A stretch of DNA of 64,000 bases, from assembly GCF_030144855.1 (NCBI RefSeq), contig NC_082710.1, positions 174,778,001-174,842,000 of the forward strand, in the 5' to 3' direction. The position numbers were made by a program, and so were the translations under genes. Below are positions 21,856 to 64,000 of this stretch, piece by piece (within the stretch, counting starts at the first letter, position 1; each line of letters opens with the position of its first letter). Under the pieces are notes generated by a model. That model was not told the origin of the DNA. It worked only from the letters and a program-made list of their open reading frames with translations, and did no database searches. Source of the DNA: Hypanus sabinus. Its lineage: Eukaryota.

Positions 21856-21859
21856 TCAG

Positions 21860-26318: not shown

Positions 26319-26857
26319 CACTCAGTGGGCAATTTACTAGGTACAGGACAGTTGTGTGTCTGCTGGTTAATGTAAATGACTGATTAGCCAATCATGTGGC
26401 AGCAGCTCAATGCATAAAAGCATTCAGACATTGTTGAGTTGTTGTCCAGACCAAACATTGGAATGGGGAAGAAATGTGACTTTTTAGGTGACTTTTACTG
26501 TGGAATGACTGTTGGTGCCAGACAGGGTGGTTTGAGTATCTGAAAAAATACTGATCTCTCGGATTTTTGTTCACAACATTCACTAAAGCTTACAGAGAAT
26601 GGTGTGTAAAACAAAACCATGCAGAGAGTGAAAATGCCTTGTTATTGAGAAGGTCAGAGAAGAATGGCCTGTCTGGTTCTGGATGACAGGAAGGTGACAG
26701 TAACTGAAGAATCCACGTGGTACCACACTGGTGTGCAGAAGAGCCTCTCTGAATGAACAACACGTAGAGCATTGAAATGGACGTGTTAGAGCACAGACGC
26801 ACACTAAGACAGAATTTATTATGTGTGGGATGTACCGAATAACGTGGCCACTGAGTG
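26319..26857 (+). mobile_element. Tc1/mariner-type non-autonomous DNA transposon
   Basis: TA flanks and imperfect TIRs cactcagtgggcaatttactaggtaca / tgtaccgaataacgtggccactgagtg; absent from the matching position upstream of copy D. Confidence 0.85.
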
Positions 26858-27499
26858 TAAATCTCCCCCAGTGTGTGGGTGATTGATTCGTGTAAGTGTG
26901 TGTTTGTAGGTCAGTGCAGAATGATGGGGATTGGTTCATACAGAATGATGCCATGACTTTACTGTCCTTCCATACCCACAAACAGGTCAAAATCTTTCTC
27001 TTCCCACTAAGCTGTTAAACAAGAACTGACCACTGACCTCCAATTCATTCTGGGAGGCTGAATATTGAAATTCAGGACTGTTCCTCACAAAGCAAAATTG
27101 GTAAATTTCCACAAACACATCTACTATAAAGTCAGCTCTTTCTGTCAGTTCCCCGGGATGCTTTCCATCAGGGTCTGGGGACTTGTCTACTGTTTACTCG
27201 GCCTACCCATTTGCTCATCACTCTCTTCAGTGACAGTTTTGGTCAAGGGTTCTCACCTCCCATTGCATTCATAACGTCTCTCCTTGACATGTTAGATGTG
27301 TCCTCAACACAAAGTCAGAATCTGGCACATGTAGTGAAATCTGCTGTCTTTGAGGGAACAGTACGATGCAATACATGGTATTAGAGAAAATAAGAATATT
27401 TGTGCATATTAAACAGTTAAAATAAGATAAGTCATATAGAGGCACAAATTTTAAAAAAGAAGTGAGGTAGTGTTCATGGCTTGTTGATCAGGACTGTGG

Positions 27500-29400
27500 G
27501 AATCACGGCGTTAAATATTGATGGTGACGATGAACAGTGTTCTGTCCAGGTGACCTCAGGCTGAGTGAAGAGTGAGTTCATTCGAAGTGGAATGGCTTAA
27601 ACAATTGAAAAAGCTACACTGAACGCTTGTGAGTTTGGAACCTGCAGCTCTGAGAAATATAATGCAGAGAATGGTGTTAGCTGTGTGGATTGTCACGGAT
27701 GCAAGAGTTGCTGGGGAATTTGCAAGTGGGAAGAAGTGGAGTAATATTTAGAAACGTCATTTAGCAAACAAATTCCATATGAATGGTGTACAAAAGCCTC
27801 GGTGACAAAATCCTCCATTACCCCGCTACAGGCCCTACGTGCGTTTTGTGCGGATGAACGAGAGCGAAAACGATCAAACTCAGAGGAGATCAAGTTCTTA
27901 TTGACAGCATTTTGCTGGCAGTTAAAATGAATACCTCCGTGCATTCAGTCCAACACATCGATGAACAAATGGAAAAGTGTGTCCAAACGCCGGACAGCTG
28001 GAGAGGCAAAAATTATGTGTTCGCATTTCTTTATGTTATCAAAGTTCAAAGTAAGATTTATTATCAGAGTACATACATCTGACCACGTACAACCCTGAAA
28101 TTCTCATCCTGTGGGTATACTCCGCAAATCTATAGAACAGTAACTGTAAACATCCAGAACTATAAACAGTAAACAAGCCGTGCAAATATAAATAAATAAC
28201 AAACATGAAATAACAATATAACTGAGTCCTTAAATGAGGGTAGCTGTCTCCTTTTGTTCAAGAGCCTAATGGTTGGGGGGTAGTAACTGTTCGGGAACCT
28301 GGTGGTGGTGAGTCTGAGAACTGAGGCATTTGTATCTCCACCTGATGGCAGCAGCAAGAGAAGAGCCTGGCCTGGGTGGTTTCTGGGTGTTTTCTCAATC
28401 TTCAGCTAAAAGATGCACATGTAAAGGAATTGCAGACTCCTCTGGGAATGAAGCTCTTGCTTTCAGACCATTGAATAAAGTGAGATGCTGTCTAGACGCG
28501 TTGCACTGCAGACAATCATAAATACGTACGAGGCATTGATTGTATATTCTGAGGATGATAAGATATATCACAAGATATATTGTCACAGAAATTTGATAAA
28601 CAGTGAATAAATATAGCTTTAGTCGTCTTAAATGATGTCTCTAAAGAACAGGCTGCGCTGTTGAAGACTGCAAAGGAGTGTATTAATGCCAATTGATGAA
28701 CTTCATTTTGCACGAGGCAAAATTAACGAGATAAGAAGGAAGTATCTGGGAGACAATGTGTCTTGGAGTGAGAAAGTTACATTTTTCTCAGCCAAATTTG
28801 TGACAGGAGCTACAAATTCTCTGGTGACCTTGATAAACCACCTCTGTGTTTATTGAGAAGAGAGGTTTCCTGAGGGTGAGGTACAATGGGCGGCTTTTGA
28901 TTTTTCTGTACATGCGGGATGGGACCTCCATTTTGGCAAAGACCAGGTCAGTGCCTTGTGTGGAAAATACCCTGATTTCCTTGCTGTCATAGTGAAGCAG
29001 TACAACGACTTCAAATTTACTGTACAGGAAAAGATTAAATCCTAACCGATTACTAGCTCGTCTGAAATGGTGACATTTGCAACTCAAAATGAAGAGTTTT
29101 GTGACCTTGCAAAGCTGACGGACAATGGCAGAACCTTTCTTACAACTAGTGCTGCTCATGAAAGAGGTTTTAGCCTCATGAATCAAATCAAAAACAAGCT
29201 GAGGAACCGTTGAAGTGAGTGTCATTTGGATATGCCAATGGGAATTCTCTGCTGGAAGAGGATTTATTAGTCTGGACAAAGATGGGTAAATGCCAAAGAC
29301 AGCAGGGAGAAAAGTGACTAAGCAACTTGAATATGTTCAATATCTTGTTCACATTTATGTCTCTTTTGTAATTCAGCTACCAATTTGGTGCTGTACGCAA
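27500..29400 (+). mobile_element. Fossil hAT-superfamily transposase (interrupted by a LINE 3' fragment at ~28050-28390)
   Basis: 29130-29240 translates RTFLTTSAAHERGFSLMNQIKNKLRNR*SECHLDMPM, the hAT C-terminal dimerisation motif; outer limits uncertain. Confidence 0.7.
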
Positions 29401-30199
29401 TGATTTCCAAATAAAACACTGATCTGCATACATTGTCAACCATTTTAGACCACTTCAATAACATGTGAAACGATCGATATTGATCGTCTCCGGTCTCTCT
29501 GATTACCATATCTGCCGGGGATCCAGCTGGGACTAAGGGGCCTCCTATTTGCTGGCGGTGCAGTTTTATATTTTTAATCTTTTTTTTTGCGGTCTTTTTT
29601 CCTACTTGCAGTTGAGTGTTCAAAGCCTTTGTCTTACCTCCGGAACTCTTTGGTTTGTTAGCAGGATCAGTGCTAGCCGATCGACTGCTCACATTTCCCG
29701 CTTTTCCCGTCTAGGATTTCAGTTTCAGTTAAGATGGCACAAAGCTTTATTCACACTATGAGCGCTCACTGGTGTGTTTCCACTGTCTTTCCACAAGTCT
29801 GAGTTCAGTCACAGAATAAATTGGGAGTTCTGAGACTCTGCTCGACAACGGATTACACTCTTATTTACACCCCAGGCGTACGTGACAAAAAGCACTTAAT
29901 CTGAAAAAGAGGCAACTTCAACTACAACTCGGTAGAATAGCAAAGTTGCACTATATGTCCTTGAGTAGTTATACATTTTCTTAAGTGTTAGTTCTCAGGA
30001 CAGTGTATCAGGCTTTCCCAAGCACAGACATGTGATAATGCTCAGAACAAGGTTATTTTGCCATCCTGTCTAGAAAGCACACTTCAGTCACACAGTGTAC
30101 ATCAGTAGCAGATAAGTGATTACAGACTTTGAATTCACATACTAGAAGATCATTAACCCCTTCATGTTCGTCACAATGTCTTACTATTTTTCTTCCTCA

Positions 30200-33100
30200 G
30201 GAGGGGTGGAAGAAATACAGGAGTAGGTGATAGGGAGAGGAGAAGGGCATGAAGTAAAGAGCCGGGAAGTAGATAAAGGGCAGGAGGAGAGAGAATCCGA
30301 GAGGAGAGGACAGAAGGCCATGGATTGAAGGGAAGAGGAGGAGCACCAGAGGGAGATACTGGGCAGGTAAAGAGATAATGTGAGAGAGGAAAATGGGAAT
30401 GCGGAATGATGAAGGGGGAGGGCCACTATTGGAATTTTGAGAAATTAATGTTCATGCCATGAGGATGGAGGCTACCCAGATGGAATAAAATGTGTTGTTC
30501 CTCCAACTTATGAGTGGCCTAATCACAACAGCAGAGGAGGCCATGGCTAGACGTGTCGGAATGGGAATGTGAAATGGAATTAAAATGGGTGGGTGGCCAC
30601 TGGGAGATCCCACTGTTTATGGTGGCTGGGGCATTGTTGCTCGATGAAGCGGACTCCCAATCTATGTCGGGTCTCACCGATACACAGAAAGCCAGACCAG
30701 GAGCACCGGACACAGTAGGTGTCCCCAACAGGCTCACAGGTGAAATGACGCCTCACCGGGAAGGACTGTTTGGGGTCCTGAATGGTAGTGAGGGAGGAGG
30801 TGTAGGGGCAGGTTCAGCTTGCAAGAATAACTGTTCGGAAGGAGATCAGTGGGGAGGGAGGAATGGGCAAGGAGTTGGTAGGGAGTGATCCCTGCAGAAA
30901 GCAGAAAGTGAGGGGAGGGTGGCAAAGATGAGCTTAGAAGTGAGATCCTGTTGCAGATGGCGGATGTTACGGAGAATTATGGACACGGGCTGGTGGGGTG
31001 ATAGGTGACCCTCTGGCATTCTCTCTCCCTACCTGCAATGGCTCTGCTCTACACGTTCTCTGACTTTCAATCGTCGGTTCCTCTCCTTTATCATGCCCTG
31101 TAAAGATTGGAAGGAAGATCACCCGGCTTCAGACTACAGAATCATGCCGTCTCCGATGCCGGCAGGCCCTGATGTCTCCAGACTGCGATCCCTGCTGCCA
31201 ACCTCAACGGTTCTGACGATCCCGAGTAGATACAGAACCCGGGCTCCACCGTGGTCAGTGTGGGTTCCAAGGACCTTGGACACCTTCAAAGTGCCGATTG
31301 AACAACCCCCAACCCCAACTCCAGCCTGGACACTGATCGACAGCACCTCCAGGCCGGGACTTTACCCACTGTCCCAGTCTCACCTTCGCCCACCACCGCA
31401 CTGCAGTCCTGTGTCCCTCAGATCCTACCGCCATCCTGAGAGACCCCATCTTCATCTCACCACACCTTCCCTCTCCTCAGACACTGTCAATCCCCTTGCC
31501 CCCGCTGATCCCAGCCCTCATCCGTGCCGGGTCTCCACAATTCCCTCTGACTTTCCCCTCTCTCAGGAAGAACCTTCTGAGGTCAGTAAGGGCCTCTCCT
31601 TTGTAACCCTGAGCGCACACCTCAGTGAGTTCCTCGCCCACCCTGACGCAGAACCCTTCTTCCACCGCATCCGTCTCCGTGCCTGCTTCTTTGGCAAGGA
31701 CTCCCCACCCCGCACCGATGACCCCATCTCCCGTCTTCAACCCTCATCCTCTTCCTGGACGTCCCAGTCTAGTCTCCTGCCAGCTCTGGATCTTTTCATT
31801 GCTGACAGCTGACGAGACATCAACCGTCTCGACTCCACTCTCCAATCTTAATCTCACTCCTGCCCAACGCACAGCTCTCCACTCTCACTGTACTAATCCT
31901 AACCTCGCCATCTAACCCGCAGATGAGGGTGGGGGTGCTGTAGTAGTCTGGCGGACTGACCTCTACCTTGTTAAGGAAAGGCGACAATTCTCAGACACCT
32001 CCTCTTACATACCCCTCGAACAGGACCCTGCTAAGGAGCACCAGGCTACTGTCTTTCACAACATCAGTAATCTTATTAACTCTAGGGATTGCCACCAACC
32101 TCATAGTTCCTTCACCCCACATCTCCCCTTTCTACCTCCTACCCAAGGAACAAAAACCTGCTTCTTCCTGCCTCACCAAACTTATATTTTCATACCATGC
32201 CTCAGATTTATCCCACCTGCTTCAGTCCCGTCCTGTCTACATCCTGGTCTATTTCTGACACTTTCCTCCCCTTTCTTGATCTTTCTGTCTCCATCTCTGG
32301 ACTCAGCTCAGCTCATCTACTGAAATTGTTTGTAAACCCACTGAGTCTCACAGCAACCTGGACTATACCTCTTCCCACCCTGTGACTTGTAAAAAGGCCA
32401 TCCCCTCTCTCTCAATTCCTCCATCTCCGCTGCATCTGCTCTAAGGATGAGGCTTTCCATTCCAAAACAAAGGAGATGTCCTCCTTTTTCAGAGAAGGGG
32501 ATTCGCTTCCTCCACCACCAACTCTACCCTCACCCGCATCTTTTCCATTTCACGCACATCTGCTGTCACCCTATTCTCCTGCCACTTAACAGAGACAGAG
32601 TTTCTCTTGTCCTCACCTACCACTCCACCAGCCTCTACATCCAGCACATAATTCTCCGTAACTTCTGCCATCTGCAACGGGATCCCACCACCAAGCACAC
32701 CTTTCCCTCCCACTTTCTCTCCTCGCAGGGATCACTCCCTACGTAACTCACTTGTCCATTCGTCCCTCCCCACTGATCTCCCTCATGATTGCAGTCTTCC
32801 GGTTAAGATGCCGAGGGTGAAAACTGACAAGAGACGCTTCTTCAGTCATCAACACAAGAAATTCTGCATGTGTTGGAAATCCGAAGCAACACACACAGAC
32901 ACAAAATGCTGGAGGACCTCGGCGGGTCAGGCAGCATATATGCAAACGGTCAGGCCGAGGGCCGAGACCCTTCTTCAGACCTGAGAAAGAAAGAGGAAAA
33001 GGCCAGAATAAAGAAAAGTGGGGAGAAGGAAAGGAGGATAGCCAGCCGGTGAAGCCAGGTACTTAACATGGGTAAAGGGCTGGAGAGGGAGGAATCTGAC

Positions 33101-33410
33101 AGGTGAGGGGATTGCACTGTAGCAGAAAAGGAAGGAGGAGTGGACCTGGGGAAGTTACAGGCAGCTGGGAAGTGTAAAGGGCCAGGGTAGGGAAAGGAAG
33201 AGCTGGGGGGGGGTGTGGGGGGGGATACCCTGATTGGAAACCCTAAGGTTTTTCTCCTCCATTCTGAGGGAGGCCTCATCATATCACATGAGGAGGTCAT
33301 GGACTGACCAGTCGAGCATTAATGGGAATCAGAACTATACTGTGTGGCCAGTGGGAGGCTCCATTTTTGGCGGATGGACTGGAGGTGTTTGATGAAATGG
33401 TCCCCCACAT
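30200..33410. mobile_element. Composite of Penelope-like retroelement pieces in alternating orientation
   Basis: Minus GIY-YIG end ~30200-31005; plus N-terminal/RT remnants ~31005-32790 (SKGLSFV, FFHRIRLRACFF, LPFLDLSVSISG, RDRVSLVLTYH); minus 3' end ~32860-33410. Confidence 0.8.
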
Positions 33411-33780
33411 TAAATGTTAAATGTTGTGACAGTCCCTGTTACCCCACTCCCCCCCGTCAGTAGGTTCCAGATTACAACCACAGATGAAGTTCTTCCTCGC
33501 TAACCCTTGCACCTCAATGAATGAATGAATGATCTTTATTGTCATTATACATAGATACAATGAAACTCTGTTTGGTTTCCTCTCAGGTAATTAAATAAAA
33601 CGGTAGATAAAAACAAGACAGTATTAGAAAAACAGAATTAAATAGATAAGTAGCAGAAAATAAGTTCCAGCTGCACCAGAATGTAACAGTAATGCACAAA
33701 GTGCCGTTAGTGCAAGTATTTGAATCCTTGTGTGTGCTCACTGTTTCAGTCATTGTTCTGTGGGAGTGGTGTGATAGAAG

Positions 33781-34260
33781 CCACATCTCTGGGGTAGAAG
33801 CTATTCCCCAGTCTATTTGTTCACATCTCTGGGGTAGAAGCTGTTCCCCAGTCTATTTGTTCACATCTCTGGGGTAGAAGCTGTTCCCCAGTCTATTTGT
33901 TCACATCTCTGGGGTAGAAGCTGTTCCTCCGTCTATTTGTTCACATCTCTGGGGTAGAAGCTGTTCCTCCGTCTATTTGTTCACATCTCTGGGGTAGAAG
34001 CTGTTCCCCAGTCTATTTGTTCACATCTCTGGGGTAGAAGCTGTTCCTCTGTCTATTTGTTCACATCTCTGGGGTAGAATCTGTTCCTCTGTCTATTTGT
34101 TCACATCTCTGGGGTAGAAGCTGTTCCTCTGTCTATTTGTTCACATCTCTGGGGTAGAAGCTGTTCCTCTGTCTATTTGTTCACATCTCTGGGGTAGAAG
34201 CTGTTCCTCTGTCTATTTGTTCACATCTCTGGGGTAGAAGATGTTCCTCCGTCTATTTGT
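33781..34260 (+). repeat. 40-bp minisatellite, 12 units
   Basis: Unit tcacatctctggggtagaagctgttcctctgtctatttgt repeated head-to-tail with minor variants. Confidence 0.97.
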
Positions 34261-35089
34261 TCTGGTTTCTGGAGTCCTGAACCTTTTGCTGGACGGCAGC
34301 AGGTCAAACAGGGAGTGGCCGGGGTGAGTGGTGTCTCCTGATTACTTTCCTCCTGAGTCTGCTGGAATAGATGGTGTCCAGTCCTCAGGCCCCCTGGTTT
34401 GAGCTTGCCCGGCCATGGGGTAAAAGTTCTTGTTTTCAGCCCACCCGTGGCCTCTCTCTCCCATTTACGCTCACCCTTCTCCTCCACTAAGAAAACTTAT
34501 CTAACCCTCTGGATTTCTCTCGAGTGTCAAGAATGGAGGCAAAACTTGAAAACTGCTGAGAAACACTTATAGAAGAGGTTTTTGGAATCTTTTCTGCAGA
34601 AGAGAAAATTCAAATACATCCACTTTTATGATGGGGGTTAGCTTAAAGGAGATTTTTTTTACACACACGTTGATGTTTGCTGCCGGAACAGGTTTGCAGG
34701 TATGGTGGTGGAAGCGGATACGGTGCAGCTTAAGAGGGTTTTAAACTGGAACATGCGGGATATGAACATGCGGACCGTGCGCAGACAGAAGGAGTTTCAT
34801 TTAATTTAGCTGAACAGGCATTTTGGGCCAAAAGATCTGCTCGTGTGCTGTTCTGTGCTCAGTCTCCCTTCATAAGTGAAAAGCTGACACCCCTGTAACA
34901 TGCTGACTAATCACCCCTTCACCCTTTCCAGTGCGGGGCAGGGGAAGGGGTCGCCTGTTCATTTACCCTGTGAGCCTCAGGCAGCTCCCTGTATTTCCTC
35001 AATGAAAACACTGCCACCGTGCGGTCGGGTTCGGTAACGGGCAGTCGCTGCAAAACCAATCGTGGCGCAGATTTCCTTTTTTGGAAAAG

Positions 35090-35247
35090 ATGCAGATTAA
35101 GGGTCTGGAAATTGTCACCAGTGAACTACAGCAGCTAATCAACTAATCTAGATTTGTAGTCTTTGTGGTAACGGTACTCTAGGGGGATGGTGTGTAAAAG
35201 TAGGAAGTAGGTATTTAAAATATTTGTTTGCCTTAACTCTGAGGGGT
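35090..35247 (+). promoter_or_regulatory. U1 promoter: octamer variant (DSE) and PSE-like element
   Basis: ATGCAGAT at 35090-35097 (about -198); ttgccttaactctgagggg at about -60 to -42. Confidence 0.55.
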
Positions 35248-35287
35248 ATGGCATAGGCCTGGATGTGGCTGGCGGAGAGAGGAAAGC

Positions 35288-35451
35288 ATACTTACCTGGC
35301 AGGGGAGAGACCGTGATCATGAAGGCGGTTCTCCCAGGACGAGGCTATCCCATTGCACTTCGGGTGTGCTGACGCCTGCGATGTCCCCAAATGCGGGATA
35401 CTCGACTGCAAAATTTGTGGTAGTGGGGGACTGCGTTCGCGCTCTCCCCTG
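35288..35451 (+). ncRNA. RNU1: U1 spliceosomal snRNA (copy a, 164 nt)
   Basis: ATACTTACCTGGCAGGGG 5' end, U1A loop ATTGCAC, Sm site AATTTGTGG, terminal stem ending CTCTCCCCTG. Confidence 0.98.
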
Positions 35452-35523
35452 ATTTTCAAAGTAAGAACAGAATTAGAAATTTTCTTGCCCGGTGCTTCGT
35501 TTTGGGAGTCAATGTTTTATTAT

Positions 35524-36407
35524 TGTTACGTACTCGTGACACATGACAGTGGAGCCCTTGTCATGTGACTGGGGTTGAAGCTGTACTGGACTTGAGGTGA
35601 TGGTCTTCTGATGGTGGAATGACATCATTTTCCCGCCAGTAGAGGTCATGTGACGGGTTTTTTACAGGTTATAAAAGGTAGACCCCACCCTGTGAGGAGG
35701 GGCAGTTCGTGGCTGGATTTGCCAAGTTGACTTCATGCCACTGCGTGTTTGAAGTGATGACGCAGTTTAGTTGAAGGGTGAAGTTTTTATTTAATGCCTA
35801 AAGTTTAAAAGGTTAATGCCAACAGGTTCTTTATGATTCTGTTAGTTTGAGAATTAAAGGAGAGTGAAGATTCAAGGTTGGAAGTTAAAGATCGAGGAGA
35901 ATCGCTTTCTACGGTGAAACGGGGGCGACCTTTGTTTGATCCTTATTTGGAAGGATTTCGTTGACTATCTTCGTGTTAATCCCTAGGTTTACCTAGAAAG
36001 GATTGAAGGTAGTGGAGAAGGAAAGGTCAGTGCCTTTAAGCCGTTCTGTTTCGTAAATTCTTCGTGGGAATTTCGACGTCGGGAATCGAAGCAAGCGACG
36101 TGAAAAAGAACTTAAATCGTCCTGTAAAGTCTCTCCTTTTAAATGGACTGTGAGCATATTGAACTTTTGGCAATATCACTTTAAGAACTGTTTTGGAATA
36201 TCACTTTAAGAACTGTTTTGGAATATCACTTTAAGAACTGTTTTGGAATATCACTTTACGAACTGTTTGAACAGCCGCTCAGCAGCTGTTTCCGGTAGTG
36301 TTTGTTTACTTTTGGGGGGGTTTGTTTTCTGTGTTTAATAAACGTGTTGTTTGTTATAAGAAACCCTTGTCGAACTCATATATTTATTGTTGCCTGAATA
36401 CGTAACA
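35524..36407 (+). mobile_element. Solo LTR (884 bp)
   Basis: Inverted termini TGTTACGTA...TACGTAACA, 4-bp target-site duplication TTAT, TATAAAA near 35670, AATAAA near 36337, internal 25-bp tandem repeat (~4 copies, ~36170-36268). Confidence 0.9.
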
Positions 36408-36689
36408 TTATAGACTTCCTTAGTTTGTGTCGGAACGGAGTTAACAAAAGTTGAGAGCGTTCGTATTAGGACACAGCTATCTCAAATGTCATTAGAACAA
36501 CCGGAGAACGAGATGAAGTCGCGCTCATGCAGTGGTGGAGTCTGATGTTGAGCGGCTTCAAACCTTCTCCGCCCTCTCCGACGACAGTGGGGAATTGCGT
36601 GGCTGCAGAGCAGAGCGATGAAAAGGAAGGTGGATTAGACCTCCGCTGAGACTCGCTGGGCAGGAATCAACAACGCTACGTACACAACT

Positions 36690-41886: not shown

Positions 41887-41988
41887 CTGTGTTTCTGATG
41901 AAAGCTCCGACGTTCCTTATTGAAATACCAGAAGGACTTCCTTGCTTCTCCAAGCCGATCGTTACTGCATGGCTTGTGGCTCCGTCCC

Positions 41989-42167
41989 TTAATATAGTCC
42001 CAGCGCGGCTATGTGGGCGGTGCTTCGTTCTTGAGGGGCGTCTAGGTAAACCAATGAAAACGCGGGCGAGTGACTCACCGCCGAAGGTTGGAGAAGGTTC
42101 CGAGGCGGCGGCCAATGACAGCGCTGCTAGTCCGAGACTTGCCGGGGCTTCGCGAAAATTCTGGAAA
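41989..42167 (-). promoter_or_regulatory. Heat-shock promoter of copy D: TATA, CCAAT, two HSEs
   Basis: TATATTAA 41989-41996; HSE 42082-42101; perfect 4-unit HSE 42148-42167. Confidence 0.9.
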
Positions 42168-42220
42168 TAGCGAGGAAGATCTGGGGCAGTCAGGGAGGTT
42201 CCGGCAGAAACTGAGTCATT

Positions 42221-45593: not shown

Positions 45594-45683
45594 TTGCAAA
45601 GAGAAGGTGACATAATCAAGTTAAAATTTTTTATCCGTAACGCTGCCATGTCAGTGTTATCAGATCCTCCCAGAGTCTTCACG

Positions 45684-47299: not shown

Positions 47300-47339
47300 G
47301 CTTTCTCCTCCCGCTCGCTCCCTGCCAACCAGTAACATT

Positions 47340-48595: not shown

Positions 48596-48599
48596 TGAC

Positions 48600-51500: not shown

Positions 51501-51600
51501 AAGGGTCTAGAGCTGAAATGTTGACTGTTCACTCTTTTCCATAGGTGCTGCCTGGCCTGCTGAGTTCCTGCAGCGTTCTGTGTGTATTGCTTAGCCATTC
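48600..51600. mobile_element. Nested Penelope-like fragments in both orientations, with inserts at ~48935-49811 (LTR-like) and ~50570-50780 (CR1 3' end)
   Basis: Homology to 36700-37500 and 20690-21670; hammerhead-like tails at 48692-48729 (minus) and 51490-51527 (plus). Confidence 0.7.
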
Positions 51601-52915: not shown

Positions 52916-53634
52916 AAGTGCTCCCTTTTGATGCACCTGTGACAAAGAAAGCTAATCTTTATTTTAAATATCACTCCCCAGGTCTGTCTGCCCTGCTCTA
53001 GTACAACTGAGATAATTCTCGGCACCGATTGCGCCTCCGTTTGCGAAAGCGCACGGAGCGTAGAACAGTACGTACTTTTTCTCTTTTGTTTGAACAGAGG
53101 AAGCCGAGGAGTGTATAAATTTTGAGACGGCAAGACGGAGATGTTAAAATATGGCATGCCCTGAACCTCCTCTGTAACTGTGACGCTTTATTCTGTCACG
53201 GTTTCCTTGTACCACCTCAATACTCAGATGCATCAGTACAGAACGCGGCAAAAGGGCGGTGGGGAATTTTTCAATGCACTTTCGATAAATAAATTTGTTT
53301 ACCTCCTAACAACCAATTATCCAACCTCATTAATATATTGTCCAGAATCCCATGTTCTCCAATCTTTGGTGTATGACCTAATTGAAAAAAAAATCTGTAA
53401 ATTCAACTTTGCGCCTGTCTGCCGGCTGAGTGTGTGGTCATCGGCTGATGCCGCTCAGCATCCCCACCTCCTGGCCGGCACCGGAACTACAACGAACTGC
53501 AAGGCCGGTTCTGCAGTCCGGGGGCAATGTCCAGATTGAAGACCAGATTCACATTCTGATTCATTCATTCATTCCTCACACATCAAAACATCCAGTGAGA
53601 TGTGTCATTACGCTAACAACCAGCACCGCCTGGG

Positions 53635-54040
53635 GGTCCTGGTCGCCTCATTATCAGAAGGATGCAGGAGCTTTATAGAGGGCACAGAGTAGATTTACCA
53701 TGGACTAGAGAGCAAGGTTGAGCGACCTTGATAGAGGTGTACAGTACGACAAGAAGCATAGGATGATATGTGGATAGCCGGAGAATTTTTCCCAAGGCAG
53801 AAATAACTACTCCCCGGGGAGATAATTTTAGGGTGATTGGGGGATTTGTTTGCACAGTGAGTGGTGAGTGCACCCCTGCTGGGGTGGGTGGTGGTGGACG
53901 CAGATACACTAAAGACATATAAGGGACTCTTAGATAGGCACATGGGGGAGTCTATGTAGGAAGGAAGGGTTAGGTTGATCTTGGAGTGGGTTAAGAGGTT
54001 GACACAACAATGCACTGTACTGGGCTGTAGAGTTCTTCAC
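53635..54040 (+). mobile_element. CR1-type LINE 3' fragment
   Basis: tcctggtcgcctcattatcagaaggatg...cagagtagatttacca...gaccttgatagaggtgtac. Confidence 0.65.
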
Positions 54041-55061
54041 TCCATGCGCTGGGGATAGTCTGCAACTGTAACCACCCAGTCTGCCCACTTTGTTTAACAG
54101 AATTCAAAAAGGTAATTCACTCCAGTCCCAGTGAGAACCCTCCTTCCATCTGGATCTATTGATCAGACTGTTCTCTGTTTTATACAACTGCCCTTTACAC
54201 AGCACCAGGTCCTCTGACCAAAGAAGGTACTGCATCAAAATAGAGAACTTTTTGGGAAAGAGCTGATTATTTACATTTTTCTCTCTCATCACCTTTTTCC
54301 CCCTTGCCCAAACCAGCTGAATCATCGGTTCACTCAGAACAGTTATGTACACTGGCTCTGTCTATATCATCGTCAACCCTTGCAGATTCCTTTTTTCCAT
54401 TTGCCGCTGAATCCCCCAAACTGATTTTTCATGGGTACCATCTTTGACCTGCATCATATCAATTGCAAGGATGTGGCAAGTGTGTGCCCGGCCAATTGAC
54501 TGTCGAGTCAATCAGTTGGGCCCCCTACACTCGCAAAGCTCTCTCTTTTTTACACAGGTTTTCAAGTACATATAGATTTGTCTTGGAGAGCCAGGTTCAT
54601 CGCTTCCATAACACGAATAGTGGATAACGTGACTCAGCCAAAACCGTTAATCCTTGTGATATGTTGTCATTTTTGTTCCGTGTACATGTCTCAACTTTCC
54701 TTCTTCAATTCAGCAGTTTGAGTACTTTGTTTTTCTAGAGCGAGGGGTACGGATAGAGAAGGACTCCCAGGTCAAGACAGATGAAGTCAAGTTAAAGACA
54801 AGTTTATGGTCATATTGATATGTACACATTAATACAGGTGTAATGAAAGACTTACTTGCAGCAACATCACAGGCACAGAGCATTAAAAACCCATCGTCAC
54901 TGATGATGAAATAAAATAACAAGGATGCACACACTCTTTTATTTGTGCATTAGAGAACAGCCCCTGTTACCCACACTGCTCCGAAGCCAGGACAGAACAC
55001 AGCTGGTTTTCTGCAAAATCGGCTTATACCAACCATTTATCTCTGCTTTTATGTTGAAAAT

Positions 55062-55225
55062 CAGGGGAGAGCGCGAACGCAGTCCCCCACTACCACAAAT
55101 TTTGCAGTCGAGTATCCCGCATTTGGGGACATCGCAGGCGTCAGCACACCCGAAGTGCAATGGGATAGCCTCGTCCTGGGAGAACCGCCTTCATGATCAC
55201 GGTCTCTCCCCTGCCAGGTAAGTAT
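55062..55225 (-). ncRNA. RNU1: U1 spliceosomal snRNA (copy c, 164 nt)
   Basis: Same sequence as copies a and b; 5' flank matches copy a. Confidence 0.98.
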
Positions 55226-56250
55226 GCTTTCCTCTCTCCGCCAGCCACATCCAGGCCTATGCCATACCCCTCAGAGATAAGGCAAACAAATATTTTAAAT
55301 ACCTACTTCCTACTTTTACACACCATCCCCCTAGAGTACCGTTACCACAAAGACTACAAATCTAGATTAGTTGATTAGCTGCTGTAGTTCACTGGTGACA
55401 ATTTCCAGACCCTTAATCTGCATCTTTTCCAAAAAAGGAAATCTGCGCCACGATTGGTTTTGCAGCGACTGCCCGTTACCGAACCCGACCGCACGGTGGC
55501 AGTGTTTTCATTGAGGAAATACAGGGAGCTGCCTGAGGCTCACAGGGTAAATGAACAGGCGACCCCTTCCCCTGCCCCGCACTGGAAAGGGTGAAGGGGT
55601 GATTAGTCAGCATGTTACAGGGGTGTCAGCTTTTCACTTATGAAGGGAGACTGAGCACAGAACAGCACACGAGCAGATCTTTTGGCCCAAAATGCCTGTT
55701 CAGCTAAATTAAATGAAACTCCTTCTGTCTGCGCACGGTCCGCATGTTCATATCCCGCATGTTCCAGTTTAAAACCCTCTTAAGCTGCACCGTATCCTCT
55801 TCCACCACCATACCTGCAAACCTGTTCCGGCAGCAAACATCAACGTGTGTGTAAAAAAAATCTCCTTTAAGCTAACCCCCATCATAAAAGTGGATGTATT
55901 TGAATTTTCTCTTCTGCAGAAAAGATTCCAAAAACCTCTTCTATAAGTGTTTCTCAGCAGTTTTCAAGTTTTGCCTCCATTCTTGACACTCGAGAGAAAT
56001 CCAGAGGGTTAGATAAGTTTTCTTAGTGGAGGAGAAGGGTGAGCGTAAATGGGAGAGAGAGGCCACGGGTGGGCTGAAAACAAGAACTTTTACCCCATGG
56101 CCGGGCAAGCTCAAACCAGGGGGCCTGAGGACTGGACACCATCTATTCCAGCAGACTCAGGAGGAAAGTAATCAGGAGACACCACTCACCCCGGCCACTC
56201 CCTGTTTGACCTGCTGCCGTCCAGCAAAAGGTTCAGGACTCCAGAAACCA

Positions 56251-56930
56251 GAACAAATAGACGGAGGAACATCTTCTACCCCAGAGATGTGAACAAATAG
56301 ACAGAGGAACAGCTTCTACCCCAGAGATGTGAACAAATAGACAGAGGAACAGCTTCTACCCCAGAGATGTGAACAAATAGACAGAGGAACAGCTTCTACC
56401 CCAGAGATGTGAACAAATAGACAGAGGAACAGCTTCTACCCCAGAGATGTGAACAAATAGACAGAGGAACAGCTTCTACTCCAGAGATGTGAACAAATAG
56501 ACAGAGGAACAGCTTCTACCCCAGAGATGTGAACAAATAGACAGAGGAACAGCTTCTACCCCAGAGATGTGAACAAATAGACAGAGGAACAGCTTCTACC
56601 CCAGAGATGTGAACAAATAGACTGGGGAACAGCTTCTACCCCAGAGATGTGAACAAATAGACGGAGGAACAGCTTCTACCCCAGAGATGTGAACAAATAG
56701 ACTGGGGAACAGCTTCTACCCCAGAGATGTGAACAAATAGACGGAGGAACAGCTTCTACCCCAGAGATGTGAACAAATAGACGGAGGAACAGCTTCTACC
56801 CCAGAGATGTGAACAAATAGACTGGGGAACAGCTTCTACCCCAGAGATGTGAACAAATAGACTGGGGAACAGCTTCTACCCCAGAGATGTGAACAAATAG
56901 ACTGGGGAATAGCTTCTACCCCAGAGATGT
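56251..56930 (-). repeat. 40-bp minisatellite, 17 units
   Basis: Reverse complement of the unit at 33781-34260. Confidence 0.97.
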
Positions 56931-59900
56931 GGCTTCTATCACACCACTCCCACAGAACAATGACTGAAACAGTGAGCACACACAAGGATTCAAATACTTG
57001 CACTAACGGCACTTTGTGCATTACTGTTACATTCTGGTGCAGCTGGAACTTATTTTCTGCTACTTATCTATTTAATTCTGTTTTTCTAATACTGTCTTGT
57101 TTTTATCTACCGTTTTATTTAATTACCTGAGAGGAAACCAAACAGAGTTTCATTGTATCTATGTATAATGACAATAAAGATCATTCATTCATTCATTGAG
57201 GTGCAAGGGTTAGCGAGGAAGAACTTCATCTGTGGTTGTAATCTGGAACCTACTGACGGGGGGGAGTGGGGTAACAGGGACTGTCACAACATTTAACATT
57301 TAATGTGGGGGACCATTTCATCAAACACCTCCAGTCCATCCGCCAAAAATGGAGCCTCCCACTGGCCACACAGTATAGTTCTGATTCCCATTAATGCTCG
57401 ACTGGTCAGTCCATGACCTCCTCATGTGATATGATGAGGCCTCCCTCAGAATGGAGGAGAAAAACCTTAGGGTTTCCAATCAGGGTATCCCCCCCCACAC
57501 CCCCCCCCCAGCTCTTCCTTTCCCTACCCTGGCCCTTTACACTTCCCAGCTGCCTGTAACTTCCCCAGGTCCACTCCTCCTTCCTTTTCTGCTACAGTGC
57601 AATCCCCTCACCTGTCAGATTCCTCCCTCTCCAGCCCTTTACCCATGTTAAGTACCTGGCTTCACCGGCTGGCTATCCTCCTTTCCTTCTCCCCACTTTT
57701 CTTTATTCTGGCCTTTTCCTCTTTCTTTCTCAGGTCTGAAGAAGGGTCTCGGCCCTCGGCCTGACCGTTTGCATATATGCTGCCTGACCCGCCGAGGTCC
57801 TCCAGCATTTTGTGTCTGTGTGTGTTGCTTCGGATTTCCAACACATGCAGAATTTCTTGTGTTGATGACTGAAGAAGCGTCTCTTGTCAGTTTTCACCCT
57901 CGGCATCTTAACCGGAAGACTGCAATCATGAGGGAGATCAGTGGGGAGGGACGAATGGACAAGTGAGTTACGTAGGGAGTGATCCCTGCGAGGAGAGAAA
58001 GTGGGAGGGAAAGGTGTGCTTGGTGGTGGGATCCCGTTGCAGATGGCAGAAGTTAAGGAGAATTATGTGCTGGATGTAGAGGCTGGTGGGGTGGTAGGTG
58101 AGGACAAGAGAAACTCTGTCTCTGTTAAGCGGCAGGAGAATAGGGTGACAGCAGATGTGCGTGAAATGGAAAAGAGGCGGGTGAGGGTAGAGTTGGTGGT
58201 GGAGGAAGGGAATCCCCTTCTCTGAAGAAGGAGGACATCTCCTTTGTTTTGGAATGGAAAGCCTCATCCTTAGAGCAGATGCAGCGGAGATGGAGGAATT
58301 GAGAGAGAGGGGATGGCCTTTTTACAAGTCACAGGGTGGGAAGAGGTATAGTCCAGGTTGCTGTGAGACTCAGTGGGTTTACAAACAATTTCAGTAGATG
58401 AGCTGAGCTGAGTCCAGAGATGGAGACAGAAAGATCAAGAAAGGGGAGGAAAGTGTCAGAAATAGACCAGGATGTAGACAGGAAGGGTCTGAAGCAGGTG
58501 GGATAAATCTGAGGCATGGTATGAAAATATAAGTTTGGTGAGGCAGGAAGAAGCAGGTTTTTGTTCCTTGGGTAGGAGGTAGAAAGGGGAGATGTGGGGT
58601 GAAGGAACTATGAGGTTGGTGGCAATCCCTAGAGTTAATAAGATTACTGATGTTGTGAAAGACAGTAGCCTGGTGCTCCTTAGCAGGGTCCTGTTCGAGG
58701 GGTATGTAAGAGGAGGTGTCTGAGAATTGTCGCCTTTCCTTAACAAGGTAGAGGTCAGTCCGCCAGACTACTACAGCACCCCCACCCTCATCTGCGGGTT
58801 AGATGGCGAGGTTAGGATTAGTACGGTGAGAGTGGAGAGCTGTGCGTTGGGCAGGAGTGAGATTAAGATTGGAGAGTGGAGTCGAGACGGTTGATGTCTC
58901 GTCAGCTGTCAGCAATGAAAAGATCCAGAGCTGGCAGGAGACTAGACTGGGACGTCCAGGAAGAGGATGAGGGTTGAAGACGGGAGATGGGGTCATCGGT
59001 GCGGGGTGGGGAGTCCTTGCCAAAGAAGCAGGCACGGAGACGGATGCGGTGGAAGAAGGGTTCTGCGTCAGGTTGGGCGAGGAACTCACTGAGGTGTGCG
59101 CTCAGGGTTACAAAGGAGAGGCCCTTACTGACCTCAGAAGGTTCTTCCTGAGAGAGGGGAAAGTCAGAGGGAATTGTGGAGACCCGGCACGGATGAGGGC
59201 TGGGATCAGCGGGGGCAAGGGGATTGACAGTGTCTGAGGAGAGGGAAGGTGTGGTGAGATGAAGATGGGGTCTCTCAGGATGGCGGTAGGATCTGAGGGA
59301 CACAGGACTGCAGTGCGGTGGTGGGCGAAGGGGAGACTGGGACAGTGGGTAAAGTCCCGGCCTGGAGGTGCTGTCGATCAGTGTCCAGGCTGGAGTTGGG
59401 GTTGGGGGTTGCACAATCGGCACTTTGAAGGTGTCCAAGGTCCTTGGAACCCACACTGACCACGGTGGAGCCCGGGTTCTGTATCTACTCGGGATCGTCA
59501 GAACTGTTGAGGTTGGCAGCAGGGATCGCAGTCTGGAGACATCAGGGCCTGCCGGCATCGGAGACGGCATGTTTCTGTAGTCTGAAGCCGGGTGATCTTC
59601 CTTCCAATCTTTACAGGGCATGATAAAGGAGAGGAACCGACGATTGAAAGTCAGAGAACGTGTAGAGCAGAGCCATTGCAGGTAGGGAGAGAGAATGCCA
59701 GAGGGTCTCCTATCACCCCACCAGCCCGTGTACATAATTCTCCGTAACATCCGCCATCTGCAACAGGATCTCACTTCTAAGCTCATCTTTGCCACCCCTC
59801 CCCTCACTTTCTGCTTTCTGCAGGGATCACTCCCTACCAACTCCTTGCCCATTCCTCCCTCCCCACTGCTCTCCTTCCGAACAGTTATTCTTGCAAGCTG

Positions 59901-62900
59901 AACAAGTGCCACACCTGCCCCTACACCTCCTCCCTCACTACCATTCAGGACCCCAAACAGTCCTTCCCGGTGAGGCGTCATTTCACATGTGAGCCTGTTG
60001 GGGACACCTACTGTGTCTGGTGCTCCTGGTGTGGCTTCCTGTATATCGGTGAGACCCGACATAGATTGGGAGTCTGCTTCATCAAGCAACAATGCCCCAA
60101 CCACCATAAACAGTGGGATCTCCCAGTGGCCACCCACCCATTTTAATTCCATTTCACATTCCCATTCTGACACGTCTATCCATGGCCTCCTCTGCTGTTG
60201 TGATGAGGCCACTCATAAGTTGGAGGAACAACACATTTTATTCCATCTGGGTAGCCTCCATCCTCATGGCATGAACATTAATTTCTCAAAATTCCAATAG
60301 TGGCCCTCCCCCTTCATCATTCCGCATTCCCATTTTCCTCTCTCACATTATCTCTTTACCTGCCCAGTATCTCCCTCTGGTGCTCCTCCTCTTCCCTTCA
60401 ATCTATGGCCTTCTGTCCTCTCCTCTCGGATTCTCTCTCCTCCTGCCCTTTATCTACTTCCCGGCTCTTTACTTCATGCCCTTCTCCTCTCCCTATCACC
60501 TACTCCTGTATTTCTTCCACCCCTCCTGAGGAAGAAAAATAGTAAGACATTGTGACGAACATGAAGGGGTTAATGATCTTCTAGTATGTGAATTCAAAGT
60601 CTGTAATCACTTATCTGCTACTGATGTACACTGTGTGACTGAAGTGTGCTTTCTAGACAGGATGGCAAAATAACTAAGTCTGTGCTTCCTTGTTCTGAGC
60701 ATTATCACATGTCTGTGCTTGGGAAAGCCTGATACACTGTCCTGAGAACTAACACTTAAGAAAATGTATAACTACTCAAGGACATATAGTGCAACTTTGC
60801 TATTCTACCGAGTTGTAGTTGAAGTTGCCTCTTTTTCAGATTAAGTGCTTTTTGTCACGTACGCCTGGGGTGTAAATAAGAGTGTAATCCGTTGTCGAGC
60901 AGAGTCTCAGAACTCCCAATTTATTCTGTGACTGAACTCAGACTTGTGGAAAGACAGTGGAAACACACCAGTGAGCGCTCATAGTGTGAATAAAGCTTTG
61001 TGCCATCTTAACTGAAACTGAAATCCTAGACGGGAAAAGCGGGAAATGTGAGCAGTCGATCGGCTAGCACTGATCCTGCTAACAAACCAAAGAGTTCCGG
61101 AGGTAAGACAAAGGCTTTGAACACTCAACTGCAAGTAGGAAAAAAGACCGCAAAAAAAAAGATTAAAAATATAAAACTGCACCGCCAGCAAATAGGAGGC
61201 CCCTTAGTCCCAGCTGGATCCCCGGCAGATATGGTAATCAGAGAGACCGGAGACGATCAATATCGATCGTTTCACATGTTATTGAAGTGGTCTAAAATGG
61301 TTGACAATGTATGCAGATCAGTGTTTTATTTGGAAATCATTGCGTACAGCACCAAATTGGTAGCTGAATTACAAAAGAGACATAAATGTGAACAAGATAT
61401 TGAACATATTCAAGTTGCTTAGTCACTTTTCTCCCTGCTGTCTTTGGCATTTACCCATCTTTGTCCAGACTAATAAATCCTCTTCCAGCAGAGAATTCCC
61501 ATTGGCATATCCAAATGACACTCACTTCAACGGTTCCTCAGCTTGTTTTTGATTTGATTCATGAGGCTAAAACCTCTTTCATGAGCAGCACTAGTTGTAA
61601 GAAAGGTTCTGCCATTGTCCGTCAGCTTTGCAAGGTCACAAAACTCTTCATTTTGAGTTGCAAATGTCACCATTTCAGACGAGCTAGTAATCGGTTAGGA
61701 TTTAATCTTTTCCTGTACAGTAAATTTGAAGTCGTTGTACTGCTTCACTATGACAGCAAGGAAATCAGGGTATTTTCCACACAAGGCACTGACCTGGTCT
61801 TTGCCAAAATGGAGGTCCCATCCCGCATGTACAGAAAAATCAAAAGCCGCCCATTGTACCTCACCCTCAGGAAACCTCTCTTCTCAATAAACACAGAGGT
61901 GGTTTATCAAGGTCACCAGAGAATTTGTAGCTCCTGTCACAAATTTGGCTGAGAAAAATGTAACTTTCTCACTCCAAGACACATTGTCTCCCAGATACTT
62001 CCTTCTTATCTCGTTAATTTTGCCTCGTGCAAAATGAAGTTCATCAATTGGCATTAATACACTCCTTTGCAGTCTTCAACAGCGCAGCCTGTTCTTTAGA
62101 GACATCATTTAAGACGACTAAAGCTATATTTATTCACTGTTTATCAAATTTCTGTGACAATATATCTTGTGATATATCTTATCATCCTCAGAATATACAA
62201 TCAATGCCTCGTACGTATTTATGATTGTCTGCAGTGCAACGCGTCTAGACAGTATCTCACTTTATTCAATGGTCTGAAAGCAAGAGCTTCATTCCCAGAG
62301 GAGTCTGCAATTCCTTTACATGTGCATCTTTTAGTTGAAGATTGAGAAAACACCCAGAAACCACGCAGGCCAGGCTCTTCTCTTGCTGCTGCCATCAGGT
62401 GGAGATACAAATGCCTCAGTTCTCAGACTCACCACCACCAGGTTCCCGAACAGTTACTACCCCCCAACCATTAGGCTCTTGAACAAAAGGAGACAGCTAC
62501 CCTCATTTAAGGACTCAGTTATATTGTTATTTCATGTTTGTTATTTATTTATATTTGCACGGCTTGTTTACTGTTTATAGTTCTGGATGTTTACAGTTAC
62601 TGTTCTATAGATTTGCGGAGTATACCCACAGGATGAGAATTTCAGGGTTGTACGTGGTCAGATGTATGTACTCTGACAATAAATCTTACTTTGAACTTTG
62701 ATAACATAAAGAAATGCAAACACATAATTTTTGCCTCTCCAGCTGTCCGGCGTTTGGACACACTTTTCCATTTGTTCATCGATGTGTTGGACTGAATGCA
62801 CGGAGGTATTCATTTTAACTGCCAGCAAAATGCTGTCAATAAGAACTTGATCTCCTCTGAGTTTGATCATTTTCGCTCTCGTTCATCCGCACAAAACGCA

Positions 62901-63895
62901 CGTAGGGCCTGTAGCGGGGTAATGGAGGATTTTGTCACCGAGGCTTTTGTACACCATTCATATGGAATTTGTTTGCTAAATGACATTTTAAAAGACAAGT
63001 TTCTAAATATTACTCCACTTCTTCCCACTTGCAAATTCCCCAGCAACTCTTGCATCCGTGACAATCCACACAGCTAACACCATTCTCTGCATTATATTTC
63101 TCAGAGCTGCAGGTTCCAAACTCACAAGCGTTCAGTGTAGCTTTTTCAATTGTTTAAGCCATTCCACTTCGAATGAACTCACTCTTCACTCGGCCTGAGG
63201 TCACCTGGACAGAACACTGTTCATCGTCACCATCAATATTTAACACCGTGATTCCCACAGTCCTGATCAACAAGCCATGAACACTACCTCTTTCTTTTTT
63301 AAAATTTGTGCCTCTATATGACTTATCTTATTTTAACTGTTTAATATGCACAAATATTCTTATTTTCTCTAATACCATGTATTGCATCGTACTGTTCCCT
63401 CAAAGACAGCAGATTTCACTATATGTGCCAGATTCTGACTTTGTATTGAGGACACATCTAACATGTCAAGGAGAGACGTTATGAATGCAATGGGAGGTGA
63501 GAACCCCTGACCATCACTGTCACTGAAGAGAGTGATGAGCAAATGGGTAGGCCGAGTAAACAGTAGACAAGTCCCCAGACTCTGATGGAAAGCATCCCGG
63601 GGAACTGACAGAAAGAGCTGACTTTATAGTAGATGTGTTTGTGGAAATTTACCAATTTTGCTTTGTGAGGAACAGTCCTGAATTTCAATATTCAGCCTCC
63701 CAGAGTGAATTGGAGGTCAGTGGTCAGTTCTTATTTAACGGCTTAGTGGGAAGAGAAAGATTTTGACCTGTTTGTGGGTATGGAAGGACAGTAAAGTCAT
63801 GGCATCATTCTGTATGAACCAATCCCCATCATTCTGCACTGACCTACAAACACACACTTACACGAATCAATCGCCCACACACTGGGGGAGATTTA

Positions 63896-64000
63896 CACTC
63901 AGTGGCCACGTTATTCGGTACATCCCACACATAATAAATTCTGTCTTAGTGTGCGTCTGTGCTCTAACACGTCCATTTCAATGTTCTATGTGTTGTTCAT
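63896..64000 (-). mobile_element. Tc1-type element end (mirror of 26753-26857)
   Basis: ta|cactcagtggccacgttattcggtaca TIR. Confidence 0.85.

What the first reader, a model, noticed from the sequence alone, without database searches (positions are those of the whole stretch)
26753..64000. Large inverted duplication with its inner breakpoint at the U1 3' end; predicts a plus-strand HSP70 just outside the window
26753-35459 and 55054-64000 are near-identical inverted arms around a ~19.6-kb spacer. Identity ends 8 nt after the U1 gene (…cccctg attttcaa). U1c has the 5' flank of U1a but a 3' box (ATAAAAGCAGA.ATAA) like U1b, as expected if exchange occurred within identical U1 genes. If the mirror continues, an HSE promoter and HSP70 ATG should appear on the plus strand about 1.1 kb past the window end (~65150).
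Basis: partly seen in the sequence, partly recalled or inferred. Interest (0 to 1): 0.7.

Follow-up and report, generated by a model that had tools for sequence, protein, structure and literature searches.

The report
Inverted duplication anchored at U1 genes
In the Atlantic stingray's heat-shock (HSP70) and U1 splicing-RNA gene cluster, a stretch of at least 8.7 kb is present twice in mirror orientation; its inner edges fall exactly at the ends of two U1 genes and patches of it have been re-copied between the arms, which is a tidy example of a well-known kind of genome structure, not a new one.

Summary
Window 26753-35459 and 64000-55054 are inverted copies with 53 substitutions in 8,212 comparable columns (0.65%). 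They also differ by three 11-14-nt indels, three 1-nt indels and a 40-bp minisatellite of 12 versus 17 units. The spacer is 19,594 nt.

Identity stops 8 nt after two convergent, identical U1 genes (35288-35451 +, 55062-55225 -). The outer limit is only the window end.

- **Divergence is patchy.** It runs from 0 to 2.4% per 500 nt (chi-square p=3e-7), with two substitution-free tracts of about 2 kb. This points to arm-to-arm gene conversion.
- **U1c has its own 3' box.** A canonical box sits at the normal distance, wholly outside the duplicated arm. The recipient site was therefore probably already a U1 gene, which supports a homology-guided exchange inside U1.
- **The U1b/U1c likeness is short.** It covers only about 25 nt.
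- **The spacer is not plain unique DNA.** It holds an older, decayed head-to-head HSP70 pair.

The predicted plus-strand HSP70 beyond the window could not be read. A neighbouring-window note (unchecked) and extra HSP70 genes on the same chromosome agree with it.

This scan has also noted several inverted duplications on other DNA of this genome. Verdict: real, ordinary palindromic segmental duplication; modest interest.

The parts
26753..35459 (.). Left arm of the inverted duplication (outer end cut by the mirror of the window end, not a true boundary)
55054..64000 (.). Right arm (reverse complement of the left arm); runs off the window
35460..55053 (.). 19,594-nt spacer; it holds HSP70 copy 2, a LINE fragment, a decayed inverted HSP70 remnant, U1b and transposon debris
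35288..35451 (+). U1a snRNA gene at the inner end of the left arm
   Evidence: Rfam RF00003, 159.6 bits
55062..55225 (-). U1c snRNA gene at the inner end of the right arm, identical to U1a and U1b
47136..47299 (-). U1b snRNA gene inside the spacer; identical coding region, but its flanks share only promoter-like motifs with U1a and U1c
35458..35466 (+). 3' box (AAAGTAAGA) of U1a at +7..+15, straddling the arm edge
55042..55050 (-). 3' box (AAAAGCAGA) of U1c at +12..+20, wholly outside the arm; same 9-mer and same offset as U1b (47116-47124)
28488..30321 (.). Substitution-free tract between the arms (1,835 nt; contains one 14-nt indel), a candidate conversion tract
32659..35459 (.). Inner 2.8 kb of the arm, including the U1 promoter and gene: only 2 substitutions (34715, 35236) plus minisatellite length change
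33782..34262 (.). 40-bp minisatellite, 12 units (17 units in the other arm, 56251-56931)
23685..25607 (-). HSP70 copy 1 (640 aa), 1,146 nt outside the visible left arm; four-unit HSE at 25870-25887 and a TATA-like box near 25715
39964..41886 (-). HSP70 copy 2 (640 aa) inside the spacer; HSE at 42149-42166; part of a 96% direct duplicate of 22163-25941
42220..44344 (-). LINE fragment (RT ORF 42802-43455) inserted upstream of the copy 2 promoter
45663..45723 (+). Plus-strand HSP70 promoter remnant that keeps the HSE with one mismatch; likeness stops right after it
45950..46812 (-). Inverted copy of the HSP70 3' flank (95% to 21857-22713, 89% to 38451-39006); U1b lies 324 nt from it

Best explanation
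This is a genuine palindromic segmental duplication in the HSP70/U1 gene cluster of the Atlantic stingray (Hypanus sabinus). Two U1 genes already lay in convergent orientation. A homology-guided event that started or ended in the shared U1 sequence copied the U1a-side DNA in inverted orientation onto the other U1 gene. That DNA was the U1 gene, its promoter and at least 8.5 kb further upstream, probably reaching HSP70 copy 1. The event was either break-induced replication / template switching or a very long gene-conversion tract. The recipient gene kept its own 3' box, so U1c is a complete chimeric gene. Since then the arms have diverged by up to ~2.4% in some stretches and have been re-homogenised in ~2-kb patches by arm-to-arm gene conversion. 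One such patch covers the U1 gene and its promoter. Shown: the arms, the edges, the patchiness, the independent 3' box. Inferred: the mechanism, the direction of copying, the extension to a mirrored HSP70. Such arms could also flip the 19.6-kb spacer by recombination; this was not tested.
For: Arms and edges.

The inner edges of both arms fall 8 nt after a U1 gene. Only three U1 genes exist in 64 kb, so a chance coincidence is well under 1%.

U1c has a perfect AAARNNAGA box at +12..+20, outside the arm, with the same 9-mer and offset as U1b. Motif density is 62 per 128,000 strand-positions, giving about 0.7% for a chance hit in a 14-nt window.

No likeness exists beyond the edges in 1.5 kb.

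Arm divergence is heterogeneous: chi-square 63, 17 df, p=3e-7, with substitution-free runs of 2,057 and 1,835 nt that were never reached in 20,000 random placements.

The differences are transition-rich (32 of 53) and include a minisatellite length change, as expected of real evolutionary divergence.

There is no gap in the region. The assembly was made from ~15-kb HiFi reads with hifiasm and was manually curated.

The same locus holds an older decayed inverted HSP70 pair, so inverted arrangements recur here.
Against: No independent reads could be laid.

The outer boundary is outside the window. A one-step duplication therefore cannot be told from conversion between older inverted cassettes, and the direction of copying is unknown.

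The U1b/U1c flank likeness is a 25-nt functional motif, not proof of common descent.

With only three U1 copies, the crossover point cannot be placed.
Confidence: 0.75

Rival explanations
1. Two old inverted HSP70-to-U1 cassettes existed long ago. The present 98.7% identity results only from long-tract gene conversion anchored in the conserved genes (U1 at the inner end, perhaps HSP70 or its flank at the outer end), not from a recent duplication.
For: Divergence is patchy with conversion-like tracts. A 3' box pre-exists at U1c. The locus already holds an older inverted HSP70 pair and a 96% direct duplicate.
Against: The arms share the same transposon fragments at the same positions over 8.7 kb. 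Conversion would therefore have had to overwrite the whole interval at least once, which is equivalent to a duplication in outcome. No residual low-level likeness exists beyond the inner edge.
Confidence: 0.18
2. Assembly artefact: the second arm is the other haplotype, or a mis-joined or mis-oriented contig, and the animal has only one copy.
For: No read support could be obtained. The region is repeat-rich and lies in a multi-copy gene cluster.
Against: Sequence is continuous, with no N gap between the arms. Both inner junctions lead into different unique DNA, each with its own U1 3' box. Local divergence of 2-2.4% and three 11-14-nt indels sit next to 2-kb identical tracts, an odd pattern for alleles. 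The HiFi reads of ~15 kb are longer than the visible arm, and the assembly was curated.
Confidence: 0.05
3. The position of the breakpoint next to U1 is a coincidence or reflects fragility of a highly transcribed gene. A non-homologous break occurred at the U1 termination region, with no exchange between two U1 genes.
For: snRNA gene loci are known fragile sites in human cells (my own knowledge, not checked here). The edge lies between the RNA end and the 3' box, where transcripts are cleaved.
Against: A non-homologous join would leave U1c without a 3' box. Instead a perfect box sits at the canonical distance just outside the arm, identical to that of U1b.
Confidence: 0.03

Closest known systems
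Palindromic segmental duplications kept alike by arm-to-arm gene conversion (human Y and X chromosome palindromes; the 11-kb inverted repeats flanking FLNA-EMD in Xq28). Recalled from my own knowledge; a mouse example is PMC13688818, seen by title and abstract only
   Same: Kilobase-scale inverted arms around a unique spacer, identity above 98%, signs of conversion between arms, and potential for inversion of the spacer.
   Different: Arm identity here is lower and patchy (0-2.4%). The arms carry an snRNA gene at their inner tips. No population or read data are available.
Inverted hsp70 gene pairs of Diptera, which evolve in concert by gene conversion (PMC3071340, PMC6995229)
   Same: Heat-inducible HSP70 genes arranged head to head, with homogenisation by conversion and frequent rearrangement, deletion and transposon insertion around them.
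   Different: The fly pairs are about 1-5 kb apart and the repeat is the gene itself. Here the visible arms are non-coding DNA plus U1, the presumed HSP70 partners would be ~39.5 kb apart, and the in-window inverted partner is a deleted remnant.
Inverted-repeat-mediated template switching / break-induced replication that produces inverted duplications (DUP-TRP/INV-DUP events at MECP2 and PLP1, my own knowledge; yeast work PMC10622511, seen by title and abstract only)
   Same: One junction lies inside a pre-existing pair of inverted homologous segments (here the 164-nt U1 genes), so it is invisible except through the change of flanks.
   Different: The second junction and any triplicated segment are outside the window. 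The homology here is only ~200 nt, far shorter than the low-copy repeats in the human cases.
Human RNU1 gene clusters, where long flanks are conserved between copies (my own knowledge, not checked here)
   Same: U1 genes are duplicated together with many kilobases of flanking DNA, and the coding regions are kept identical.
   Different: Here the conserved flank lies only on the 5' side and the copies are inverted and interleaved with HSP70 genes.
Little skate HSP70 array (locus L001)
   Same: Multi-copy 640-aa HSP70 genes in a cartilaginous fish.
   Different: The skate has three genes head to tail with a 6.66-kb period and no inverted repeat of 300 nt or more in 22 kb. The palindromic layout is therefore not general in batoids.

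Membership tests
Palindromic (inverted) segmental duplication | Two copies of at least 1 kb and at least 90% identity in inverted orientation on one chromosome | tested here: met
   8.7 kb visible; 98.7-99.1% by blastn, 0.65% substitutions
Palindromic (inverted) segmental duplication | Non-duplicated spacer between the arms with sharp loss of identity at both inner edges | tested here: met
   19,594-nt spacer; the alignment is at random level beyond 35459/55054
Palindromic (inverted) segmental duplication | Both arms present in the organism's DNA (not an assembly artefact) | not testable with these tools
Indirect support only: no gap and a curated HiFi assembly
Palindromic (inverted) segmental duplication | Arm-to-arm gene conversion (heterogeneous divergence, identical tracts) | tested here: met
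   chi-square p=3e-7; substitution-free tracts of 2,057 and 1,835 nt. This is a pattern, not a direct observation of conversion
Palindromic (inverted) segmental duplication | Defined outer boundary | not testable with these tools
Functional vertebrate U1 snRNA gene | Full-length match to the U1 covariance model | tested here: met
   RF00003, 159.6 bits, model positions 1-166 of 166, for all three copies
Functional vertebrate U1 snRNA gene | 3' box (AAARNNAGA core) within about 9-19 nt after the RNA end | tested here: met
   U1a at +7..+15; U1b and U1c at +12..+20
Functional vertebrate U1 snRNA gene | Proximal and distal promoter elements; expression | not tested
   Only an octamer-like ATGCA(G/A)AT block about 200 nt upstream was seen in the alignment; no RNA data were examined
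Inverted-repeat-mediated template switch / BIR product | One junction inside pre-existing inverted homologous segments | tested here: met
   Inferred from the chimeric U1c: arm-type 5' flank with an independent canonical 3' box outside the arm
Inverted-repeat-mediated template switch / BIR product | Second junction with microhomology or another homology block | not testable with these tools
   Lies beyond position 64000
Head-to-head HSP70 pair spanning the palindrome | A plus-strand HSP70 with an HSE promoter mirroring 23685-25887 | not testable with these tools
   Predicted HSE at ~64866-64883 and ATG at ~65146. Support is limited to an unchecked note that starts 800 nt past the end and extra HSP70 genes on the chromosome

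The most novel reading that the evidence does not exclude
U1 snRNA genes act as the recombination handles that build and reshuffle the stingray HSP70/U1 cluster. Short (~200 nt) identical U1 genes in opposite orientation seed template switches that copy 10-kb-scale HSP70-U1 cassettes in mirror image. The resulting palindromes then keep U1 promoters and HSP70 genes identical by conversion and can flip the intervening HSP70 genes between individuals.
Probability: 0.25. Interest if true: 0.45.

Novelty: new member of a known kind. Interest (0 to 1): 0.3.

Why it matters
It gives a clean, base-resolved example of a small, highly conserved RNA gene serving as the homology for a large inverted duplication. 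It shows how a complete extra U1 gene can arise as a chimera. It also warns annotators that this HSP70/U1 cluster is a nested set of inverted and direct repeats that can mislead read mapping, copy counting and orthology calls. It does not reveal a new mechanism or a new gene.

Tried and rejected
1. **Read validation.** For the same reason I did not scan the skate locus for U1.

2. **Reading past the window.** The look-up of encoding contigs for HSP70 copy 1, copy 2, P0022 and P0031 located them on the same 187-Mb chromosome, but no DNA or coordinates were served. The mirrored HSP70 could therefore not be placed.

3. **Protein content of arms and spacer.** Twelve ORFs from the arms and the spacer (120-436 aa) had no Pfam hit. 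The 436-aa ORF in the right arm (58902-60212) translates to low-complexity sequence and is not taken as a gene.

4. **Longer homology between the 3' flanks of U1a, U1b and U1c.** None was found above shuffled controls.

5. **Orientation of HSP70 neighbours in other rays.** Single genes with no neighbours were listed, or the protein was not on record.

6. **The bacterial promoter/terminator scan** is irrelevant for this genome.
Full report
**Identity of the DNA.** Exact protein look-ups place the HSP70 genes of the window on a 187-Mb chromosome of assembly GCA_030144855.1. Source names for close relatives on the same contig read Hypanus sabinus, the Atlantic stingray. That assembly was built from PacBio HiFi reads of about 15 kb with hifiasm and Hi-C phasing, and was manually curated (bioRxiv 10.1101/2025.02.26.637739).

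**The observation.**
- The repeat finder and a blastn of the window against itself show that 26753-35471 and 64000-55042 are inverted copies.
- A MAFFT alignment of the arms gives 53 substitutions in 8,212 comparable columns (0.65%; 32 transitions, 21 transversions).
- The arms also differ by indels of 14, 14 and 11 nt, three 1-nt indels, and a 40-bp minisatellite with 12 units in the left arm and 17 in the right.
- Rfam finds three full-length U1 genes: U1a at 35288-35451 (+), U1b at 47136-47299 (-) and U1c at 55062-55225 (-). All three are identical over 164 nt.
Beyond that point the alignment falls to random level.
- The spacer is 19,594 nt.
- Position 26753 pairs with 64000, so the outer 'end' is only the window limit.

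**What the arms contain.** No ORF from the arms or spacer that I tested has a Pfam match, apart from HSP70 and a LINE reverse transcriptase in the spacer. Sensitive self-comparison shows copies of interspersed repeat families at 72-78% identity in both the arms and the spacer. So the arms are non-coding, transposon-littered DNA with a complete U1 gene and its upstream region at the inner tip. The two U1 genes point toward each other across the spacer.

**Arm divergence is not uniform.**

| Stretch (500-nt bins unless noted) | Divergence |
|---|---|
| 26753-27252 | 2.0% |
| 28753-30252 (three bins) | 0% |
| 30253-30752 | 2.4% |
| 30753-32752 (four bins) | 0.6-1.2% |
| 32659-35459 (inner 2.8 kb, with the U1 promoter and gene) | 2 substitutions in all |

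Heterogeneity is highly significant (chi-square 63, 17 df, p=3e-7). Substitution-free runs of 2,057 and 1,835 nt never occurred in 20,000 random placements. This is the pattern expected from arm-to-arm gene conversion laid over an older divergence of about 2%. It is a pattern, not a direct observation of conversion.

**The inner junction.** The three 3' flanks, read in the direction of transcription, share only the first ~25 nt. In 1.5 kb nothing else exceeds shuffled controls.
- Over +1..+8, U1c equals U1a (ATTTTCAA), while U1b has TTTTTCGA.
- Over +9..+25, U1c matches U1b at 15 of 17 positions and U1a at 10 of 17.
- The core of the vertebrate snRNA 3' box, AAARNNAGA (consensus from my own knowledge), is at +7..+15 in U1a. 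It is at +12..+20 in both U1b and U1c, as the same 9-mer AAAAGCAGA.
- The U1c box (55042-55050) lies wholly outside the duplicated arm.
- The motif occurs 62 times in 128,000 strand-positions. A chance hit in the ~14 admissible positions is therefore about 0.7%, and identity of the 9-mer and offset with U1b is much less likely still.

I conclude that the site that received the inverted copy was already the 3' part of a U1 gene. That is what a homology-guided exchange inside the U1 sequence predicts. A blunt break 8 nt after U1 would have left U1c without a 3' box.

**The spacer is not neutral filler.**
- HSP70 copy 2 (39964-41886, minus strand) with its 3' flank and promoter is a 96% direct duplicate of the copy 1 unit (22163-25941).
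- A 2.1-kb LINE fragment sits 54 nt upstream of its heat-shock element.
- About 3.5 kb further on, a plus-strand promoter remnant keeps the heat-shock element with one mismatch (around 45700-45723).
- That remnant is followed at 45950-46812 by an inverted copy of the HSP70 3' flank (95% to the copy 1 flank, 89% to the copy 2 flank). U1b lies 324 nt beyond it.
- This confirms another first-reader note (s1-231718) of a deleted head-to-head HSP70 partner.

The region 20.8-64 kb is therefore a nested structure. An old, decayed inverted HSP70 pair sits in the centre (5-11% divergence). The 96% direct duplicate of the HSP70 unit links the stretch just outside the left arm with the spacer. The youngest layer is the 98.7% outer palindrome. 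By divergence, the order of events is inner pair, then direct duplication, then outer palindrome; this ordering is inference.

**The prediction of an HSP70 beyond the window.** Copy 1 has its four-unit HSE at 25870-25887 and its ATG at 25607. A continued mirror puts the HSE at about 64866-64883 and the ATG at about 65146 on the plus strand. I could not read that DNA: the chromosome file is too large for the look-up tool, which returned no DNA or coordinates. Three things agree with the prediction:
1. Identity is still about 98% in the last 500 nt of the window.
2. An unchecked note from the adjoining window describes a 'heat-inducible HSP70 facing a complete U1 gene, present twice', starting 800 nt past the window end, about 66 nt before the predicted HSE.
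3. At least three more HSP70 genes lie on this chromosome outside the window: a second gene encoding exactly the copy 2 protein, P0022 (97% identical to copy 1), and P0031 next to a TRIM-like gene.

I put the prediction at roughly 85%, untested. That note also mentions a U1 facing the HSP70, whereas copy 1 has transposon DNA (20854-21855) where such a U1 would lie. The mirror may therefore end near the equivalent of 21857. This is speculation.

**Is it an artefact?** I could not test this with reads. No served run held more than 10% of the sampled words. Four indirect arguments speak against an artefact:
- There is no gap between the arms.
- Each inner junction leads into different unique DNA with its own 3' box.
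- 2%-divergent stretches alternate with identical 2-kb tracts.
- The reads are longer than the visible arm.

I leave 5% for an artefact.

**Comparison with what is known.** Inverted segmental duplications with spacers and conversion between arms are well known; the human sex-chromosome palindromes and the Xq28 FLNA-EMD repeats are examples from my own knowledge. Inverted hsp70 pairs that evolve in concert are described as the basic hsp70 unit of Diptera (PMC3071340, PMC6995229). Junctions hidden inside pre-existing inverted repeats are the hallmark of template-switch or BIR inverted duplications (my own knowledge; PMC10622511, seen by title and abstract only). The little skate has three HSP70 genes head to tail with a 6.66-kb period and no inverted repeat, so the mirror layout is not general in batoids. 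This scan has also noted several other inverted duplications on other pieces of this same genome, including a followed-up 8.2-kb palindrome with the same conversion-like pattern.

**Verdict.** The structure is a new member of a known kind. Its most interesting detail is that a ~200-nt snRNA gene appears to have served as the homology for a duplication of at least 8.7 kb and produced a complete chimeric U1 gene. Interest 0.3.

Noticed in passing
window 8859-10637 (-): HSP70 pseudogene or fragment: 93-97% identical to copies 1 and 2 over about 1.8 kb, but the longest ORF is only 327 aa (9299-10282).
   Followed up: partly
window 42220-44344: LINE fragment (RT ORF 42802-43455, Pfam RVT_1) inserted 54 nt upstream of the heat-shock element of HSP70 copy 2. 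The uninterrupted state is seen at copy 1 (25941/25938 junction).
   Followed up: partly
window 20854-21855 vs 30201-31190 and 59524-60525: A 1-kb piece of a repeat family (other copies at 72-78%) is 95-96% identical between the flank of HSP70 copy 1 and both arms. It is either two young insertions or a small extra duplication, and it abuts the HSP70 3' flank exactly at 21856/21857.
   Followed up: no
window 33782-34262 and 56251-56931: A 40-bp minisatellite has 12 units in one arm and 17 in the other. It would make a handy marker for telling the arms apart in reads.
   Followed up: partly
same chromosome, outside the window: The exact 640-aa protein of HSP70 copy 2 is encoded at a second place on the 187-Mb chromosome. 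Two more paralogues (P0022, and P0031 next to a RING-PRY-SPRY gene) lie there too.
   Followed up: partly
L001 1-21923 (Leucoraja erinacea, JAMYXN010000098.1): The little skate has three 640-aa HSP70 genes head to tail with a 6.66-kb period and no inverted repeat of 300 nt or more.
   Followed up: partly
window 14630-18876 (-): The public gene call for the divergent HSP70 (636-aa ORF at 14630-16540) spans 4.2 kb and gives 639 aa, that is, with an intron, unlike the intronless copies 1 and 2.
   Followed up: no
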